Origin: Entomortierella parvispora E1425
Lineage: Eukaryota > Fungi > Mortierellomycota
Direction of reading: 5' to 3'
DNA: 64,000 bases
Assembly: GCA_020891255.1 (NCBI GenBank)
Contig: BQFW01000002.1
Coordinates: forward strand, 62,001 to 126,000
Made by a program: the position numbers and the translations under genes. Under the pieces are notes generated by a model, which did no database searches, was not told the DNA's origin, and worked only from the letters and a program-made list of their open reading frames with translations. Positions 2,551-26,537 of this stretch are shown in pieces (position 1 is the first letter of the stretch; each line of letters opens with the position of its first letter).

Positions 2551-3102
2551 TTTTAGTCTCAAGAACCTCATCACCACCCTCCTCCATATAAAAATGTTCA
2601 TTGTTTTTTTCATCCTTCTCTATCGTCTGGTTTGGGGTCCCATTCTCGAGGTAAAAAGGAAAAAACTCTGGAAATCGCGGCCAATTTTTTATGATAAACC
2701 GTTTCTCTTCTACGTGTACGATGGACTTAAAACATCCAGGCTGAACGCTATATAAGGAAGGACAGGAAATAAAAAAAAAAAAAGAGGTAGGAAGGACGAG
2801 GACGAGGAGGAGAGGAAGAGTAGGCATAGGATATGGTGGAAGGCATCAAGGCAAGGAGACATACGAGCCCATGTTGCCATCCAAATTGATTTTTCCTTTC
2901 TTTGAAAGAACTTGTTAACTCGGGAAGGAGAGAAGGCGGCCATGAATTCAACATTCTGAACGAAATAAACGACAATAATAAAAGAAAGAGAAAAAAAAAG
3001 AGAGAGAGAGGGAGAAAAGGAAAGGTGGTGGCTGTACACAAGGCGAGGAGGAGGGGGGGGGGGGGGGGGAAAGAGGAGGGAGACAGACAGCGTGTTGCTA
3101 TA

Positions 3103-6100
3103 TTACTGGAACTGATGTTGTTGCTGCTGCTGTGGCTGAGAGTAGTGCTGCTGAGCATGCTGGTGCTGAAGCTGCTGTTGCTGTTGCTGCTGTTGAGGAT
3201 GGTGCTGGATCTGACAGAGCTGCTGCTGGTGATGTTGCTGCTGCAAAAAGTGAGAAGCGGCCGAACTATTCTCTCCCGACTGACCCTCCAGATGTCCAGT
3301 GTGAGCGCCTCCGGCACTGATGCCTGGAGGTGGCATCGTTCCGTAGGGGTGGAATCCAGTCTGAGGCATCATTGACATGCCTTGGTATCCCATCGTTGTC
3401 ATAGGCTGGGGCATGTAAGCCACGCCGGGTCCATAGTAAGGAGAGGGGATCTGTCCAGGGTAGTGTCCATAGAGCTGGTTGTGCGTAGGCATGCCAAAGT
3501 AAGGGTGGTGGTGCTGAACCGAGTAGGCACCAGGGCTGGACGCGGGGGCATCCTGACCCTCTCCGTTAATACCCAAACTGTTGGAGTCCATCAAACTGGA
3601 GCTATCAGACGACTGAGCCTGCAGACCGTGGTGCTGTTGGCTGGCAGACATGGCCATATAGTACTGTGGGCTCGATCCGTTAAAGTCGGTCGATCCCGAG
3701 TATCCACTCTTGCTTGAACCAAGCTTTGCATTCTCTGATCCAGAGGACGACTCGCCACCCAGCAACAACTGGATTTCCTCCAAGAGTCGCTTGCATCCTT
3801 GAACATTTTGCGAACTGGACTTTGAGAGCGTCGACTTGACCTTTTCTGCGAGGACAACCTTTTGCTGCTGCTCCACGTTAGGGGAGGCCAAGATCTTTTG
3901 GATCAAGCTCACGCCGTGGACTTGATCGCCCAGGATCTCGGCCAGAACATGATCCTGACTAGAGTGAACAATGCTGTTGATGAGGGTATCGCTGGCATCC
4001 GGTTCCTGGCGCTGGTTGATCACCTTCAGGACCGTCAGGGAGGCAAGCTTGTGTGTGGCAAGCAGAGACATGTGGGGTGCCAATCGAGGGGCGAGAACAC
4101 GGTAGCGACCAGGAAGCTGCGAGTTGTCCAACAACCAGGTCAACATCAATGTTCCGTTGGGGTTGGTGGCCAAGGCCAGTGCGTTCTGTACAACAGCCAC
4201 GGCGACATGTTTCTAATACATTGAAATGAAGGACCAAACATGAGTGTCTTTGAACCATATGAATTCTGCAACTGCAACAAAGGCACGAAAGTGTAGAGTC
4301 GCTTACCTGCTGAATTTTGCTCGCGTGTTGGCTCTCGAGAGAAGCTCTCATGGCCCGAGCACCAAATCGACCCTGAGCAATCTCCCAAAACTTGTCCGAC
4401 ATGGCCTCAAAGATGAAACCGTTCCGTGCCTGTCCCAGACGCAAACAGCACTGCACCACATAGTTTCCAAACTGATCCAGCAACAGGGGTGGGGTGTAAG
4501 GTTGAACGTATTTGCAGATCAGCTCGACCTGTGCGGGACTCTTTGCACAGTCAATGATCTTTTGAGCAGCCCAGGTTCCGTTCTTGTGGACTCCAATGGA
4601 CGCCAAATGAGGCGCAATCAGCTCGAGCATCTTTGTCTTTTGTGGTTCAGAGCAGCGTTCGAAAAGCTTTTGCATCACTGTGTTTCCAATGTAGTCTACA
4701 GCAATACCAAGAAGAGAGTGGGTCAATTTCCTTTGTCCAATCTCGCACGAAAGATGACTGTTTCAACCTTCAGTATTGAAGTTATATCCTTACCACTGCA
4801 AAGCTCCACGCACTCATCCATGCACTCGTTCGAGAGACTGTCCAGCTCCTTGACAGTGCAGTGGCCGCTGTCGAGTCTCTTCCTGATCTCGCGCAAGCGA
4901 GGCGCATCCAGACGTCGGTGGGGTGACGGTTCCGCAACGGGAGGGATGGAGGAAAAGTAAATCACAGGCTCCGAGGAGCTGGGCGTGAGGGTTTCCTGAG
5001 CATCCGAATCATCGTCCGTACTGAATTCTTTCAACATGGCTAACCGCTCATAGGCGGGATCTTCAACCGGAGCAGATTCTTGATCGTGACCATACGAGGG
5101 CGGGCTTTTCGTGGCCATGGTCATCAGGGCCAGCATGCGATCCAGCTCGGTGGGTGCATCTGCTTCGCGACGCGTCATCCTGCCAGTCGAGGCATTCGAC
5201 ATGCGAATCTCGCCGTTCATGTCCAAATTGTCACCATGGCCAGGCGAGGGGCTGTCACTGGGCGATTGCTTTGCGGGTACCTTTGCAAATCCAATCCGGA
5301 CAGCTCCTGTACCAGGTCCAAACACTTCTTGACCATGCATGACCTTCTTGGCCAAAACCGCATCTTCCATATTCTCAAAGTTGATGAATCCACACGACTT
5401 GTGAGTAAGAACACGGGCCGATTCAATGTTTCCAAAGTGCGAAAACACTGCGTGCAGCGAAGAAGGCGTGGCTGACGCGGGAATGTTTCCGAGCCCTAAT
5501 GTAACATACAACTCCTGGGTCAGCACTTTTGAACAAGACGAGAGAATTGTACAAGAATAGATCATAGACACACTGCCCAGACAGACAACTTACATAATGC
5601 ACGAGTTGGGTGCAGCACTGGAGCATCCGCATTGGCCATCAACTCTGCCTTTCCATAACCGACACGCACAGTGGCATTGCCGATCCGGCCACCTCTTCGC
5701 TCTGAGATATCTTCTTTGGCCCGCATGGCATCTTCGACTCTTGTAAAGTTGATGAAAGCGCACTCCTTGTCAGGGATCACCTTGAGCGACTCGACTGGTC
5801 CAAAGGCGCTAAAGACTTGCATCAGATCGTTGGTGGTGAAGCTTGGGTCTACATTACCGATCCATAATGATCTAGTTGGGATCTGTTGCGTCACAGCCGC
5901 GGCGGCCGAAGAGAGACCCAGGTCGTGATGCTCCTAATGATGACGAAAGCAAGAAGAGTCGACAGGTAAGACAATGACCGGCACCAGTGTGGAGTCTTCA
6001 AGGAACAAAAAAAAAGAAGTGAAGCCACGGGGAATGATGACAATGGGCAAGTCCGCGGATAAATGACTGTGGCGAACATGGCTGTGAAACACAGCAGCAC

Positions 6101-20235: not shown

Positions 20236-20736
20236 CTTTTGCTCTTCCCCGGCCTTTTCGATGGGAAGACTGCGCGTTGGTTCGTGGGTCTTGCCAAGGT
20301 GTCGTGCAGGCCCTCAATCCTCCGTCCTTCTGCTCTTCTATCGGCCCCTCTGACGAGAACCAATGTCCACTCGGTGTATGGTCAGTTCCTCTGGAGGACG
20401 TATCCAGTAACAGGAGAGCGTGAAATGAAAAAGAAACATGATTCACGGATCTGTTTTTGTAAGATATCTCAACATAGCAGGTCCAAGGATAAATAAACAC
20501 GTTAGATGCACGGACCTTGTCAACTCGATTGTTTCTGAGGATCAGATTCAAGATGACGGTTACCGAATGATTGGGCTTGTTGTTGTCAGCGTTGGAGAAC
20601 CCTGCTCCCTCTCTCTGCTTGCTGTCCTGGCTCTGCTGTGTTGTCTTGGTAACCAAGTCCTGTTACCCTTGAAATTTTCTTCGTGGAACCATGGGACAGT
20701 TGGCGAAATCAAGTATTTCGCTTCGGAGATCCAAGC

Positions 20737-20739
<3 letters not shown>

Positions 20740-20784
<45 letters not shown>

Positions 20785-20788
20785 CTCT
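20740..20788. repeat. (CT)n microsatellite upstream of the Sel1 gene
   Basis: Directly visible tandem CT dinucleotides. Confidence 0.9.
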
Positions 20789-20868
20789 CCATCCCAGCCA
20801 CCTTCCGCCCCTCAGCCCTCTTCAAGAGCAGGACGATCATCCACATCAGCCCATGAAAAAAAGCTCTA

Positions 20869-23578
20869 ATGAATCAGTGCGATACTACTCTTCTGACCGG
20901 TTTCGAAAAGGTCCACATCGACGGGATCTGTGACCATAACCCTCTGGTTAACTCGCACTATCCTGCTTTGATACCCATATTCAATGCACTCAAGTAATAG
21001 GACCATCAAGACAAAAACTTATCTTGCAATCTTGTCGCAGTAGAAACTCCCCTTACTTATTTTTTTTTTTTTTTTTTTTGATCTTGTCGTGAATTGATTT
21101 TTCAGGTTTTTGGACGATGTAGCTCAAGGAGATCCAATCGCCCAGAACAAGGCTGGACGAATGTACGAAGTCGGCGAAGATGTTCCTCAGAGCTACGAAA
21201 AAGCCATGGGGTTTTATCTGAAGGCTGCTCACCAAGGGAACCCACAGGCTCAGAACAGCCTCGGTATCCTACACCGTGACGGCAAAGGAGTTCCAAAAAA
21301 TGAGCAAATGGCTAAAAGTTGGTTTTCCAAGGCTGCAAGCCAAGGACTCGCCGATGCCCAGTTCAACTTGGGAATGATCTATCGCAGTGAAAATGATCGT
21401 GCCAGAGCTGTAGAGTGGGTTTTGAAGGCGGCCAGCCAAGGATATGGAATTGCTCAGTTCGCCGCTGGCGGGATGTATTACGAAGGCTATGGTGTCCAGC
21501 AGGATCTATCGAAAGCCATGGACTCGTACTTGAAGGCAGCTGATGAAGGATACGCAATTGCTCAATACAGTGTTGGTGCAATGTACGACTACGGCGAGGG
21601 CGTCACCCAGGACTACGCTAAGGCACTGGAATGGTACTCAAAGGCGGCCAAGCAAGGATACCCCAACGCTCAATTCAATTTGGGTGTCTTACATCAACAT
21701 GGCAGAGGCGCCCCGCAGGATAGTTCTTTGGCTGTGAAGTATTACGCAAAGGCAGCTGAACAGGGACTCGCCCAGGCTCAATACCACATGGCGCTTCTCT
21801 TTCACATCGGAGGAATTATTCCACAGGACAAGTGCGAGGCCATCCAGTGGTATTTGAAGGCTGCTGGTCAGGGCAACGCGGATGCGCAGTTTAGCTTAGG
21901 CGCGATATATGAGGAAGGAGATGGCGTAGTTCAAGACTATCAGGCTGCCGTGGAATGGTATTCAAAAGCGTCCCATCAAGGGCATGCCACAGCCCAGTAT
22001 TGCTTGGGGTTTCTTTATCAACATTCCAAAGATGGTCCGCTTGACAGTTCATTGGCAATTGCGTGGTATACTAAGGCTGCCGAGCAAAGAAACATTGGTG
22101 CTCAGCGCAACTTGGGCCAGATGTACAAGAAAGGTCAAGGTGTTTCGCAGGATTACCAGAGGGCCATGGAGTGGTATATAAAGGCTGCCGAGCAAGGAGA
22201 CGCCAGTGCTCAATTCAACATTGGCCTCATGTATGACAGAGGTAAAGGTGTTTCGCAGGATTATCAGAAGGCCATGGAGTGGTATATAAAGGCTGCCGAG
22301 CAAGGAGACGCCAGTGCTCAATTCAACATTGGCCTCATGTATGACAGAGGTAAAGGTGTTTCGCAGGATTATCAGAAGGCCATGGAGTGGTATATAAAGG
22401 CTGCCGAGCAAGGAAACGCCAGTGCTCAGTTCAACATTGGCTTCATGTATGACAGAGGTAAAGGTGTTTCGCAGGATTACCAGAAGGCCATGGAGTGGTA
22501 TATAAAGGCTGCCGAGCAAGGAAACGCCAGTGCTCAGTTCAAGATTGGCCTCATGTATGACAAAGGTGAAGGTGTTTCGCAGGATTACCAGAAGGCCATG
22601 GAGTGGTATATAAAGGCTGCCGAGCAAGGAAACGCCAGTGCTCAGTTCAACATTGGCCTCATGTATGACAGAGGTAAAGGTGTTTCGCAGGATTACCAGA
22701 AGGCCATGGAGTGGTATATAAAGGCTGCCGAGCAAGGAAACGCCAATGCTCAGCGCAACATTGGCACCTTGTACTACTCGGGTGAAGGTGTTTCGCAGGA
22801 TTATCAAAAGGCCATGGAGTGGTATATAAAGGCTGCCGAGCAAGGAAACGCCAGTGCTCAGTTCAACATTGGCCTCATGTATGACGAAGGTGAAGGTGTT
22901 TCGCAGGATTACCAGAAGGCCATGGAGTGGTATATAAAGGCTGCCGAGCAAGGAGACGCCGATGCTCAGCGCAACATTGGCCTGATGTACAGCACCGGTC
23001 GAGGTGTTTCGCAGGATTACCAGATGGCCATGGAGTGGTATATAAAGTCCGCTGAGCAAGGAAACGCCAATGCCCAGGGCAGCATTGGCCTGATGTACAA
23101 CAGTGGTCAAGGTGTTTCGCAGGATTATCAAAAGGCCATGGAGTGGTATATAAAGGCTGCCGAGCAAGGAAACGCCAGTGCTCAGTTCAAGATTGGCCTC
23201 ATGTACAGCAGTGGTCGAGGTGTTTCGCAGGATTATCAAAACGCCATGGAGTGGTATATAAAGGCTGCCGAGCAAGGAAACGCCAATGCTCAGCGCAACA
23301 TTGGCCTCATGTATGACAGAGGTAAAGGTGTTTCGCAGGATTATCAGAAGGCCATGGAGTGGTATATAAAGGCTGCCGAGCAAGGAAACGCCAGTGCTCA
23401 GTTCAACGTTGGCCTCATGTATGACAGAGGTAAAGGTATCTCTCAGGATTACCAGAAGGCCATAGAGTGGTATACAAAGGCTGCCGAGAAAGGAAACGCC
23501 AATGCTAAGCACAACATTGGTCTGATATACAAGAATGGTCAAGGCGCTTCGCAGGATTATCAAAAGGCCCTGAAGTGA
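20869..23578 (+). CDS. Sel1-like repeat (SLR/HCP-like) protein with ~22-23 36-aa repeats
   Basis: ORF 21110-23578 is built of SLR units (A.F.LG..Y..G.GV.QDY..A..WY.KAA.QG). A putative short first exon at 20869-20993 (MNQCDTT..FNALK, donor gtaata) splices in frame to the acceptor at 21105; this 5' exon is tentative. Confidence 0.9.
22172..23575 (+). repeat. Tandem array of 13 x 108-bp units (12 near-identical) inside the Sel1 gene
   Basis: TGGTAT(A/ATA)AAGGCTGCCGAG recurs every 108 bp at 22172, 22280, ... 23360 and 23468. Units 1 and 2 read identical at the nucleotide level. Confidence 0.97.
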
Positions 23579-23864
23579 TACATGAAGACCACCGAGCAAG
23601 GAAACCTCGAAGCTCTGTTCAGCACTGGCTTGATGTTCTATGATGAAGCGGATGTGCCGTTGGACCATGAGAAAGCTATAGTGGCTAAACAAGGCTGGCA
23701 ATAAAAGTAGAAGTCTAGAGCGATTACCTCAACTGAAGGCAGTACAGATCTCCACTTGCCAGTTGTTCTGTGATGGATGTCATTCTGACATAAAATACTG
23801 ACAGGGGAATAATTTTGTATTGAAATCAACAATTATATCTGACAATCATGATGTCCTTGCCCAA

Positions 23865-26537
23865 TTAGCGCTGGTATGGATGATACGAGCCACCTCCTCG
23901 GCCTGAGGATGACTGAGAGTTGCCTCCAGAATTGCCTCCACGAACGGGTCCGCCTGATCCACTGCTGCCATTCGATCCACCTTGTCTGCTGCCGCTGGAA
24001 GATGCTGGGCCTGATCCCCTGCTTGAGCTGTATCCTCCACTGCCTCCACCTCCACCTCCTTGATGACTACCGCTCTCTTGTCCATAGGATCTATCAGACT
24101 GTGATCCATAGCGTCTCTGACCTGAGGAGGAGCCGCCATCATGGTCATCATATTTCCCACTGCTCCCACTGTATCCGTTGCCGCTACCACTGTTGCCACT
24201 GTCCCCATTGTAACTGCTGTTGTTACCACGATTACCGCTGCCACCCTGAGAATTGGAGTTGTTGTAGCCAGACTGTCGTCCTTGGGATCCACCCCCAGAA
24301 CTGCCACCATCGCCTCCTCCTCCATTAGCACCGCCTTGATTAGGTCCGCCATATCCAAACTGTTGACGGTGGAACGCCATCATGGCCGGATCCATGCCCA
24401 TCCCAGGACCTCCCATCCCGGCTGCAGCTGCAGGGTTACCGTAAGCGCCGGCCATTCGAAGGCGATTCATCATCATGGCCGCAGCGGCAGGGTTGTAGCG
24501 AGCAGCAGCCATCATGGCCTGGTAGGCTTCCATCTGGTTACCGACTCCAAATCCGCCACCATAAGCGGCAGCCATCATCGTGGGGTCCATGCCAAAGTTG
24601 CGCATGCCCCCTTGTCCAGCGCCAAAGCCATATCCTTGCTGGTTGAATCCTGCTCCTGCACCACCTGCTCCATTGGCCCCTCGACCCTCTGCGCGGTTCT
24701 TCGGCTGAGCTCTCTTGACCTCAATCTGAAAAGAAGAAAAAAGAGTGAAGAATGGATACGGTGGTTCAGTCGGGGATCGTAGGTTCGATTCATAACAAAA
24801 TACACAACGAAACGAAAGCAGGCACGTACGGTCTTGTGGTGCAGCACTAAGTCACGTCTGCTGAGTGCGGCCTCGACACCGCGATCGGACTCGAATGTAA
24901 TAAATCCGAATCCGCGAGGGCGTCCAGTGTTGCGATCCAGCATCAAGGTGGCGTCCAGAACATGACCAAACTGTGAAAAGTAGTTTGCAAACTCTTCCTC
25001 TGTGACCTCGGGGGCAATTCCTCCCACAAAGATCTTTTCCGTCTTTTCCTGCTCCTCGCGTGGGATAGCACGCTTTGGATCAATCTAGGGTGTGGAGATG
25101 GACAGAAAAATAAATAAAAACAGCCGTGTACAAAAAACAACAAAGACAGGAGCCGATGTGATGCTATCGTTGTCCTACGGGGAGCCCAAGAGAAGTCCTA
25201 AAAGGGATAAAAAGACTGACTGACTGACTTACCATCTTTCCATCCAAGTGGTGGTCCTCCTTTAACACAGCGTCAACGTTCTTTGCATCAGCGAATGTGA
25301 GGAACCCAAATCCTCTGGATTTGTTGGTAACAGGATCTTTCATGACCATGCATTCTGACAGTTCACCATAACGCGAGAAATACTCTGAGAGACTAGCTAA
25401 AAGATGCGATATCGAATGTAATGAACGATAATGTCGATACAAAAAAAAAAAGGTGGAGAGGATGCCCTGTCAGCAAAATGCAGTTGCTTCCTAAGAGGAA
25501 AAAGGAAATATATCCTTTTCTTTTTCTGTCCTTTTGAAGAGGTGCAACAGCCATACGTGGACCCAACAGAGTTGGCACCACCGCAGGCGATTTATAATTC
25601 TTGTTTGTATATCTGGAGCAAACTAGCTTACCATCTGTAGTCTCCCAATTAAGGCCACCGATAAACATTTTGCTATGAGTATAGGATATGGAGTGAAGGG
25701 ACATTTGGGAGGATGACCAAGGGAAGGGGTGGTTGAAGGTGGGGTAGTAGTAATAATAGTAATAGTAGCAGTAGTAAAGGTAAGCAAACAACGAAGTAAA
25801 AAAAAAAAAAAAAAAAAGTATCTGAGAGAGGGAGATGTCAAGGAGGCGGTGACCAAGCGAGCCAGCCCTTTCTTCTACAACTACGAAGGGGTTGAACGGA
25901 GTACACTCGTTCTACAGTCGATCCTATTCGTCCATCAGCTAATTCAAAGAATGGATGATATACGAGATCATTTGACAAAACAAAAGGAAACAGATCTGTT
26001 GGACACTTACCCAAGCTCACGGTTGGCCGAGCTGGACGACGATGACGATGGTTGCTGGTGCTGCTGTTGCTGTTGCTGCTGCTGTTGCTGTGAATAGGGA
26101 TCCGATCGGTCTTCTTGGTCATATGAACCATAGGAGCGCGATGGCTGCGACGACTCTCGCTTTGCCTGCTGCTGGTATGAAGAGTCGTGCTGCTGATGGT
26201 ATGGCTGGGCGGGATCGTATCCACCCGAAGGCGAGTCCTCGCGTTTCGCTGAATCCTCGCGCTTGTAGTTGTGGTTGTCGTCCCGGCCGCTGTTATTAGC
26301 GTATCTGGAGTCATCGTCATAGTCTCTGCGACTGTTGGAGTAGTGCGAGTCGTCGTGGCCCTTGCTCAGTGAATCCTCACGGTGACGGCTCAGATCGCTG
26401 GAGCGATGGCTGTGGGAGCTGGTGGTGTTGTAGAGAGTATCATCGTCATCCTGGTAGGGATCTGATCCCGTGCTGGCACCAGTGTCGGCATAGGGATCAT
26501 CGTACAGGTCAAAGTTGTCATCGTGTCTCGATGTCAT
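23865..26537 (-). CDS. HRP1: Hrp1/Musashi/hnRNP-D-like protein with two RRMs and a Gly/Asn/Met-rich prion-like C-terminus
   Basis: Exons give KMFIGGLNWETTD, VMKDPVTNKSRGFGFLTF, IDPKRAIPREEQEKTEKIFVGGIAP and GRPRGFGFITF, ending GGGSYHPYQR (a PY-NLS-like end). Confidence 0.85.

What the first reader, a model, noticed from the sequence alone, without database searches (positions are those of the whole stretch)
22172..23575. Sel1 array with TAL-like/HET-like hypervariable positions in otherwise homogenised 108-bp units
Seen: 12 consecutive units share a near-invariant scaffold (WYIKAAEQG..A.AQ..IG.MY..G.GVSQDYQKAME), and units 1 and 2 are identical. Amino-acid change is concentrated at fixed sites: repeat residue 10 (D/N), 12 (S/N/D), 15-16 (FN, FK, RN, GS, HN), 22-23 (DR, DK, YS, DE, ST, NS, SS, KN) and 25 (K/E/R/Q). 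Silent differences are few (GATTAC/T, CAGAAG/CAAAAG). Units look like mosaics: unit 11 combines the NANAQRN half of unit 6 with the DRGKG half of units 1-3, and FK recurs in units 4 and 10 with different 3' halves. The ~10 N-terminal repeats are old and diverged. Known: concerted evolution plus hypervariable binding-face codons is the signature of the WD40/TPR/ANK sensor repeats of fungal NLRs (e.g. Podospora HET-E) and of TAL effector RVDs. Inference: this may be a recombination-diversified recognition module (non-self, bacterial endosymbiont or host sensing) built on SLRs, standing alone without a NOD or kinase domain.
Basis: partly seen in the sequence, partly recalled or inferred. Interest (0 to 1): 0.75.

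Follow-up and report, generated by a model that had tools for sequence, protein, structure and literature searches.

The report
Shuffled Sel1 repeat array, variable groove
A soil fungus gene encodes a protein made only of Sel1 repeats. Its last dozen repeats are near-copies that recombine with one another and differ almost only at residues lining the predicted binding groove; this pattern is known from fungal immune receptors but is seen here without the receptor's other domains.

Summary
Twelve in-frame 108-bp units (22169-23464) are 90% identical in DNA. Units 1 and 2 are identical, and unit 11 is a clean mosaic of units 6 and 1. Amino-acid change is concentrated in eight codons per unit.

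A high-confidence model puts those codons on one side of helix A and in the flanking loops. In solved Sel1-like proteins that side is the concave, peptide-binding groove.

The gene has two exons (41-codon exon 1, then only Sel1 repeats), with no NOD or kinase domain in it or beside it. It belongs to a family of at least 25 Sel1 genes in a Mortierellaceae genome. In this gene repeats 1-8 match paralogues position by position, while repeats 9-22 are closest to each other.

The adaptive claim is not settled. Silent differences are not rare (dS 0.18). dN/dS at the variable codons is 1.8-2.1 here (P about 0.05) but about 1 in two of three paralogous arrays. No orthologue or second strain was found, so repeat-number polymorphism is untested.

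Verdict: a Sel1 version of the "high internal conservation" repeats of fungal NLRs, not attached to an NLR. First readers of this scan flagged similar arrays elsewhere in this genome.

The parts
20740..20789 (+). (TC)25 microsatellite about 80 bp upstream of the start codon, in the presumed 5' leader or promoter
   Evidence: TRF; sequence
20869..20993 (+). Exon 1: ATG plus 41 codons and 2 bases (MNQCDTTLLTGFEKVHIDG...FNAL). No known domain. Conserved with the first exons of paralogues L012 and L013.
   Evidence: Upstream DNA alignment. Frame, in-frame stop at 20854 and GTAATA donor. Pfam blank.
20994..21105 (+). Intron, 112 nt, GT..AG, with a T20 tract
   Evidence: Donor and acceptor sit at the same places in L012 and L013.
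21106..23578 (+). Exon 2: 823 codons, all Sel1-like repeats, plus the TGA stop
21197..22060 (+). Old repeats 1-8, preceded by a partial first repeat at 21106-21196. Each is nearest to the repeat at the same position of another paralogue.
   Evidence: dS between paralogues in this half is 0.9-1.75.
22061..22168 (+). Transitional unit 9, 83% identical to the array
22169..23464 (+). Homogenised array of 12 units of 108 bp. Mean identity is 90.4% in DNA and 85.1% in protein. The variable codons of each unit are 11, 13, 16, 17, 20, 23, 24 and 26 (E of EWYIK = 1).
23465..23575 (+). Unit 22 (84% identical to the array) plus one Lys codon
23576..23704 (+). TGA stop where the unit has its Trp codon, followed in frame by the remnant of one further, diverged repeat (YMKTTEQGNLEALFSTGLMFYDEADVPLDHEKAI...). 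This remnant corresponds to the last repeat of the paralogues.

Best explanation
This is a real two-exon gene for a free-standing Sel1-like-repeat (SLR) alpha-solenoid of about 865 residues in a Mortierellaceae fungus. No known targeting domain was found; a signal peptide was not tested.

Shown:
- The C-terminal 12-14 repeats arose by tandem amplification of one ancestral C-terminal repeat. Its nearest outside relative is the repeat at residue 868 of paralogue L012.
- The repeats have been reshuffled by recombination between the in-phase 108-bp units. Unequal crossing-over or gene conversion would do this.
- Purifying selection holds helix B and the packing residues of helix A (dN/dS about 0.1-0.2).
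- Amino-acid change accumulates at or above the silent rate only at residues 13, 16, 17, 20, 23 and 24 of helix A and at flanking loop residues 11 and 26.

Inferred:
- These residues line the concave groove, where SLR and TPR proteins hold extended peptides. Residue 17 is the position of the backbone-anchoring Asn.
- The array is therefore a ligand-binding groove whose surface is varied by point changes and by recombining two sub-cassettes (residues 11-17 and 20-26).
- The old N-terminal half keeps repeat-specific groove residues and probably binds a conserved partner.

Whether the variation is adaptive, and what the ligand is, remain open.
For: - Gene model. Sel1 only.
- Array and identities.
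- Units 9-22 are nearest to each other; units 1-8 are nearest to the same position in paralogues.
- No other locus in the genome exceeds about 80% DNA identity to the units (79% over three units, up to 82% for single units).
- Recombination: p=0.0026, with explicit mosaics.
- Site clustering: 8 of 20000 random trials.
- dN/dS is 2.1, or 1.8 cross-validated, at the variable codons, against 0.10-0.21 elsewhere and 0.12 at exposed helix-B control positions.
- AF2 model: pLDDT 97.2. Helix A is unit residues 12-24 and helix B is 32-8.
- Fold match to SLR crystal structures: 6OK3 TM 0.82, also 4BWR and 8SXQ.
- Variation lies on one helical face (R=0.67, p=0.004), at a similar helical angle (52-84 degrees) in three paralogous arrays; the concentration is significant in only one of them, L013.
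- PMC3851747: the concave face is formed by the first helices and binds a peptide tail through a conserved Asn at the sixth residue of helix 1.
- In the old repeats, the groove-class residues are 50% identical between orthologous repeats of seven paralogues and 14% between non-orthologous repeats.
- The same positions vary in internally conserved Sel1 arrays of Mortierella alpina, Mortierella sp. AD094 and Dissophora proteins.
Against: - dN/dS above 1 is borderline here (binomial P=0.054), and the site set was partly chosen from the same data.
- dN/dS is about 1 in arrays L011 and L012; the four arrays pooled give 1.23 (CI 0.78-1.86). Relaxed constraint alone could give this pattern.
- No second strain or orthologue was found, so there is no evidence of repeat-number or allelic polymorphism.
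- No repeats have been exchanged recently with paralogues, unlike the Podospora nwd genes.
- The groove assignment rests on helix phase and published SLR geometry.
- The gene ends at a TGA in place of a Trp codon and has lost the last ancestral repeat.
- No partner, ligand or expression data exist.
Confidence: 0.6

Rival explanations
1. Neutral by-product. One repeat was amplified fairly recently by unequal crossing-over. The copies are drifting apart, and only the solvent-exposed helix-A residues are free to change. The array merely lengthens the solenoid, and its variation has no function.
For: dN/dS at the variable codons is 0.85-1.03 in arrays L011 and L012, and 1.23 (CI 0.78-1.86) for the four arrays pooled. 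Within-array dS of 0.18 shows the copies are not very young. The same positions are among the most variable among 366 old repeats of the family.
Against: In the window array the rate at these codons is about twice the silent rate. Other positions that are just as tolerant in old repeats (1, 4, 8, 29, 30, 32-34, 36) have dN/dS of 0.12 here. In the old repeats the same groove positions are conserved repeat by repeat across paralogues, so that face is functional in this family. Mosaics show continuing exchange rather than plain decay.
Confidence: 0.3
2. Decaying gene. The TGA at the Trp codon of the last unit marks a gene on its way to being a pseudogene, and the variation reflects loss of constraint.
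For: The stop replaces TGG of the unit and cuts off a repeat that all close paralogues keep. The remnant after it is diverged. The gene also lacks three ancestral repeats present in six paralogues.
Against: 865 codons remain open across a recombining array. Scaffold dN/dS is 0.10-0.2, so the array is under clear purifying selection. Exon 1, the splice sites and the upstream conserved block are intact.
Confidence: 0.06
3. Assembly artefact. The array was mis-built from reads of several Sel1 paralogues, or mis-expanded.
For: Tandem 108-bp repeats with two identical neighbouring units are hard to assemble from short reads.
Against: The genome is 38.9 Mb in 20 contigs, which implies long reads (inference). 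Only 216 bp are strictly identical in tandem. No other locus exceeds about 80% identity to these units. The frame is kept over 2.47 kb, and differences between units follow codon structure.
Confidence: 0.03

Closest known systems
High-internal-conservation (HIC) WD40, ANK and TPR repeat domains of fungal NLRs (Podospora HET-E/HET-D/nwd family; Paoletti 2007; Dyrka et al. 2014, PMC4986451)
   Same: Both have tandem repeats about 85% or more identical within one gene, shuffling of repeats by recombination, and amino-acid variation confined to a few positions. In the TPR case those positions map to alpha-helices of the concave face.
   Different: The repeat type here is Sel1-like, which is not among the NLR repeat types listed. 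There is no NOD or N-terminal effector domain. The fungus is an early-diverging one (Mortierellomycotina), not Dikarya. No exchange between paralogues is seen. Positive selection is only borderline, and repeat-number polymorphism is untested.
Bacterial and eukaryotic Sel1-like repeat proteins of known structure (E. coli c5321/EsiB 4BWR, H. pylori HcpC 1OUV, Legionella LceB 8SXQ and LpnE 6DEH, Oxalobacter 6OK3, SEL1L/Hrd3)
   Same: Same fold and 36-residue repeat geometry: helices of 13 residues, loops of 7 and 3. Foldseek TM is 0.82 to 6OK3, with 37-43% identity among the best matches. The Asn at the sixth residue of helix 1, which anchors a peptide backbone in c5321 and HcpC, is residue 17 here.
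   Different: Those proteins have diverged repeats, not a homogenised array. Most are secreted or ER-luminal. Here no known targeting domain was found and the ligand is unknown.
H. pylori slr (hcp) gene family under positive selection (Ogura et al. 2007, PMC1941758)
   Same: It is a family of Sel1-like repeat genes expanded by duplication, with dN/dS above 1 at residues that homology models place on the protein surface.
   Different: Selection there acts between alleles and paralogues of short secreted proteins. It does not act between homogenised repeats inside one gene.
Expanded Sel1 and kinase-Sel1 gene families of Glomeromycotina and other Mucoromycota
   Same: These are lineage-specific expansions of Sel1 repeats (over 1000 motifs per genome in arbuscular mycorrhizal fungi) described as having no clear function in fungi. 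This genome has at least 626 candidate Sel1 repeats.
   Different: The papers read describe copy number and genomic setting. In the library searched, none describes homogenised arrays or groove-restricted variation.
TAL effector repeats with repeat-variable diresidues
   Same: Near-identical tandem repeats in which a few fixed positions carry almost all the variation.
   Different: TAL repeats have a different fold and bind DNA, with two variable residues per 33-35-residue repeat and a solved one-repeat-one-base code. Here eight positions vary and no ligand is known. This is an analogy only.

Membership tests
Sel1-like repeat (SLR) proteins, Pfam PF08238, TPR clan | Repeated 36-44-residue motif scoring above the Pfam gathering threshold | tested here: met
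   750.9 bits against a cut-off of 30.7, in 20 stretches
Sel1-like repeat (SLR) proteins, Pfam PF08238, TPR clan | Helix-loop-helix repeats stacked into a superhelix like solved SLR proteins | tested here: met
   AF2 with alignment A2 gives pLDDT 97.2 and pTM 0.83, with alternating 13-residue helices. Foldseek gives 6OK3 TM 0.82 and 4BWR TM 0.71-0.76. This is a predicted, not solved, structure.
HIC repeat domains of fungal NLRs (Dyrka et al. 2014) | Repeats over 85% identical over at least 100 residues | tested here: met
   Mean pairwise protein identity is 85.1% over 12 x 36 = 432 residues, so borderline. Each of the eight units 1-5, 7, 11 and 12 is at least 95% identical in DNA to its nearest unit.
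HIC repeat domains of fungal NLRs (Dyrka et al. 2014) | A NOD (NACHT or NB-ARC) domain and an N-terminal effector domain in the same protein | tested here: not met
   Exon 1 is 41 codons without a Pfam match, exon 2 is Sel1 only, and the upstream ORFs have no domains. The neighbouring genes are ordinary cellular genes, none an NLR or kinase.
HIC repeat domains of fungal NLRs (Dyrka et al. 2014) | Positive diversifying selection at a few positions of each repeat | tested here: inconclusive
   dN/dS is 2.1 (CI 1.07-4.9), 1.8 cross-validated, and the event ratio is 1.87 with P=0.054. Paralogous arrays give 0.85-1.5.
HIC repeat domains of fungal NLRs (Dyrka et al. 2014) | Variable positions on the concave binding face | tested here: met
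   Variation lies on one face of helix A (R=0.67, p=0.004). Helix assignment comes from the model. In SLR structures the concave face is formed by the first helices (PMC3851747).
HIC repeat domains of fungal NLRs (Dyrka et al. 2014) | Repeat-number polymorphism among strains | not testable with these tools
   No orthologue or second strain was found in the protein database or the metagenomes.
HIC repeat domains of fungal NLRs (Dyrka et al. 2014) | [quoted passage not shown] | tested here: not met
   The best match of any array unit outside the gene is 75-82% in DNA, against 84-100% inside it.
TAL effector repeats | 33-35-residue TAL repeats with variation at residues 12 and 13, binding DNA | tested here: not met
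   Pfam finds only Sel1 and TPR-clan families. Eight positions vary. The fold is an SLR superhelix.

The most novel reading that the evidence does not exclude
Free-standing Sel1 arrays of Mortierellaceae may form a recombination-diversified recognition repertoire that works without a fused NOD domain. In this reading a conserved N-terminal half docks onto a signalling partner, and a shuffled C-terminal groove samples variable ligands such as proteins of endobacteria, mycoviruses or conspecific non-self. That would be a second, NLR-independent way for fungi to build variable receptors.
Probability: 0.2. Interest if true: 0.8.

Novelty: new variant of a known kind. Interest (0 to 1): 0.5.

Why it matters
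Homogenised repeats with variable binding-face residues are the hallmark of the sensor domains of fungal NLRs. So far they have been described for WD40, ANK and TPR repeats in Dikarya.

Here the same architecture appears in Sel1-like repeats, in an early-diverging fungus, in proteins with no NOD or effector domain. It also recurs in several paralogues and in other Mortierellaceae genera.

That gives the large Sel1 expansions of Mucoromycota, whose function is unknown, a concrete and testable hypothesis: a variable peptide-binding groove. It also names the residues to mutate. If the variation proves adaptive, it would widen the known ways in which fungi generate recognition diversity.

Tried and rejected
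- **Orthologues or other strains.** A full-length protein search and a search scored on the old N-terminal 318 residues gave nothing above 61% and 50% identity. An exact 30-mer of the unit had no hit in metagenome contigs. A back-translated search of metagenomes found only generic SLR genes at 54% identity or less. Strain comparison was therefore not possible.
- **Single-sequence AF2** of the array failed (pLDDT 49.8, helix A not formed). It was replaced by a run with a 54-row alignment.
- **Hidden upstream domain.** None found.
- **Antisense ORF 22049-23701 (550 codons).** Rejected as a by-product of the repeat. The sense frame is Sel1 at E 1e-234.
- **Entropy of old repeats as a neutral yardstick.** It saturates and cannot separate dN/dS of 0.2 from 1, so I used it only qualitatively.
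- **Literature.** No paper in the library searched describes homogenised Sel1 arrays in fungi.
- **Joined protein.** Each exon was searched by reference, and no search or fold of the spliced protein was run.
Full report
**What is there**

The window is G000:C2:62001-126000 of a 38.9-Mb, 20-contig eukaryotic genome. The best named protein matches are Mortierella, Dissophora, Linnemannia and Actinomortierella.

TRF reports a 108-bp array at 22063-23605 with 14.3 copies, 88% matches and no indels. It lies in an 822-codon open frame, 21110-23578, that Pfam reads as Sel1 throughout (PF08238, 20 stretches, 750.9 bits). A 550-codon antisense ORF over the array is a by-product of the repeat.

**Gene model**

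- Upstream DNA of the window aligns with that of paralogues L012 and L013. The alignment shows a conserved first exon, a GT donor and an AG acceptor at matching places.
- In the window, exon 1 is 20869-20993 (ATG, 41 codons plus 2 bases, with an in-frame stop 15 bases upstream).
- The intron is 20994-21105 (112 nt).
- Exon 2 is 21106-23578.
- Exon 1 has no Pfam match. The ORFs in the 3.7 kb upstream have none either.
- The flanking genes encode a carnitine acyltransferase, an F-box/LRR protein, an RRM protein, a coatomer subunit and a TM7S3-like protein.

The protein therefore stands alone, with no NOD or kinase domain in it or next to it.

**The observation**

In a 36-residue register (E of EWYIK = 1), exon 2 holds a partial first repeat and 22 full units.

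- Mean identity among the twelve units is 90.4% in DNA and 85.1% in protein.
- Units 1 and 2 of the twelve are identical.
- Nonsynonymous differences fall at codons 11, 13, 16, 17, 20, 23, 24 and 26, with a few singletons elsewhere.
- By a minimum-change count there are 29 nonsynonymous and 12 synonymous changes. Twenty-two of the 29 fall in those eight codons. The eight most-hit codons hold 23 of 29, which random placement reached in 8 of 20000 trials.

**Concerted evolution and mosaics**

- Units 1-8 each have their closest relative at the same position of another paralogue (69-81% DNA identity for units 2-8; unit 1 shows no clear match, 51% against 50%), not in their own gene.
- Units 9-22 each have their closest relative inside the gene (83-100%), against 73-82% outside.
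- The closest outside unit is usually the one at residue 868 of L012. The array therefore looks like an amplification of one ancestral C-terminal repeat.
- The paralogues' N-terminal halves differ by dS 0.9-1.75, and arrays of different genes by 0.6-1.4, against 0.18 within this array.
- Sixty of 120 pairs of informative sites are incompatible, and a PHI-type permutation test gives p=0.0026. Array L011 gives p=0.0012.
- Unit 11 equals unit 6 through codon 19 and unit 1 from codon 20. Unit 10 joins the 5' part of unit 4 to a 3' part like units 8 and 9.
- Breakpoints fall inside helix A, so residues 11-17 and 20-26 behave as two sub-cassettes.
- No other locus exceeds about 80% identity (79% over three units, up to 82% for single units), so recent exchange between genes is not seen.

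**Structure**

A single-sequence AlphaFold run failed (pLDDT 49.8). With a 54-row alignment of paralogue segments and database homologues (A2) the model reached pLDDT 97.2 and pTM 0.83.

- Helix A is unit residues 12-24, followed by a loop at 25-31.
- Helix B is residues 32-36 plus 1-8, followed by a loop at 9-11.
- Foldseek matches SLR crystal structures: 6OK3 at TM 0.82, then 4BWR and 8SXQ. Sequence search of solved structures agrees.
- Helix A carries 70% of the pairwise amino-acid differences. They lie on one helical face (moment R=0.67, p=0.004), at a similar angle (52-84 degrees) in arrays L011, L012 and L013; the concentration is significant only in L013 (p=0.0004) and not in L011 or L012.
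- The c5321 structure paper states that the concave surface of an SLR superhelix is formed by the first helices. It adds that this face is the less conserved one. It also reports that the face binds an extended peptide tail through an Asn at the sixth residue of helix 1 (PMC3851747). That residue is N17 here.

I could not measure side-chain directions because coordinates are not returned. The groove assignment is therefore inference from helix phase plus published geometry.

**Is the variation adaptive?**

| Array | dN/dS at the variable codons | Source |
|---|---|---|
| Window | 2.1 (column-bootstrap CI 1.07-4.9) | |
| Window, sites defined only from the other three arrays | 1.8 | |
| Window, event count | 1.87, binomial P=0.054 | |
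| L011 | 0.86-1.03 | |
| L012 | 0.85-1.0 | |
| L013 | 1.4-1.5 | |
| Four arrays pooled | 1.23 (CI 0.78-1.86) | |

- The rest of the window unit is at 0.10-0.21.
- A control set of positions that are tolerant in old repeats but lie on helix B or the loops is at 0.12.
- The variable sites therefore evolve at least as fast as silent sites and perhaps faster in this gene. Positive selection is not demonstrated.
- One independent point supports a functional groove. In six old repeats compared across seven paralogues, the groove-class residues are 50% identical between orthologous repeats and 14% between non-orthologous ones. The control positions give 39% and 23%.

**Family context**

- The genome holds at least 626 candidate Sel1 repeats, and I read about 25 Sel1 open frames at the fetched loci.
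- Internally similar arrays (units at least 75% identical to another unit of the same gene) occur in at least a dozen of them. The largest are L013, L018, L011 and this gene.
- Proteins of Mortierella alpina, Mortierella sp. AD094, Linnemannia and a Dissophora kinase-Sel1 protein show similar arrays, with many of the same positions variable.
- Compared with six paralogues, the window gene lacks three ancestral repeats between unit 8 and the array.
- It ends at a TGA in place of the Trp codon of a further unit, whose remnant follows in frame.

**Comparison with the known**

- The pattern is that of the "high internal conservation" repeats of fungal NLRs. Those are over 85% identical, are shuffled by recombination, and have variable sites on the concave face of TPR and ANK domains (Dyrka et al. 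2014; review).
- It differs in repeat type, in taxon, in lacking a NOD and an effector domain, and in showing no exchange between paralogues.
- Sel1 expansions in Glomeromycotina are known but described as having no clear function.
- Positive selection on surface residues is known for the H. pylori slr genes.
- I found no paper describing homogenised Sel1 arrays in fungi.
- First readers of this scan flagged similar arrays on other pieces of this genome. The look-ups showed no follow-up on them.

**Verdict**

I class it as a new variant of a known kind, of moderate interest.

Noticed in passing
window 23576-23704: The gene ends at TGA exactly where the repeat unit has TGG (Trp). A diverged further repeat continues in frame for 41 codons, and close paralogues keep this last repeat and a C-terminal tail. 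This is either a real truncation or a base error in the assembly.
   Followed up: partly
window 22061-22168 compared with L011, L012, L013, L015, L017, L018: Six paralogues share three ancestral repeats between repeat 8 and their arrays (signatures ALFCLG, ECYL..AQNY, KSA..AQ.NMG). The window gene lacks them, as if they were removed or overwritten when its array expanded.
   Followed up: partly
window 20690-20720 and the matching upstream regions of L012 and L013: A conserved block (CCCTTGA..TTTTCTT.GTGGAACCA) lies about 170 bp upstream of the start codon in three paralogues. It may be a shared promoter or leader element.
   Followed up: no
window 20740-20789 and 21059-21078: A (TC)25 microsatellite lies just upstream of exon 1, and a T20 run lies inside the intron. 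Both are likely length-variable.
   Followed up: no
proteins P0033, P0056, P0125, P0154, P0196, P0197 (other Mortierellaceae): Many Sel1 proteins of other Mortierellaceae carry, once or several times, a conserved domain of about 100 residues with no precomputed Pfam family beyond Sel1/TPR-type repeats (…VQAVR…I(V/I)LW(D/E)D(V/I)…ALYVRHG…PFLKG…L.PLRIAAVPG..LDVVV). The window gene does not have it.
   Followed up: no
L018 (G000:C10:622000-630500), open frame 2559-5486: The Sel1 array here seems to repeat in blocks of several units; for example, the units at residues 616 and 760 are near-identical. That would be a higher-order repeat rather than single-unit homogenisation.
   Followed up: no
window 23865-25800, minus strand: An intron-containing gene for an RRM protein lies tail to tail with the Sel1 gene, about 290 bp from its stop. 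It has a long Gly/Ser/Met-rich low-complexity C-terminus.
   Followed up: partly
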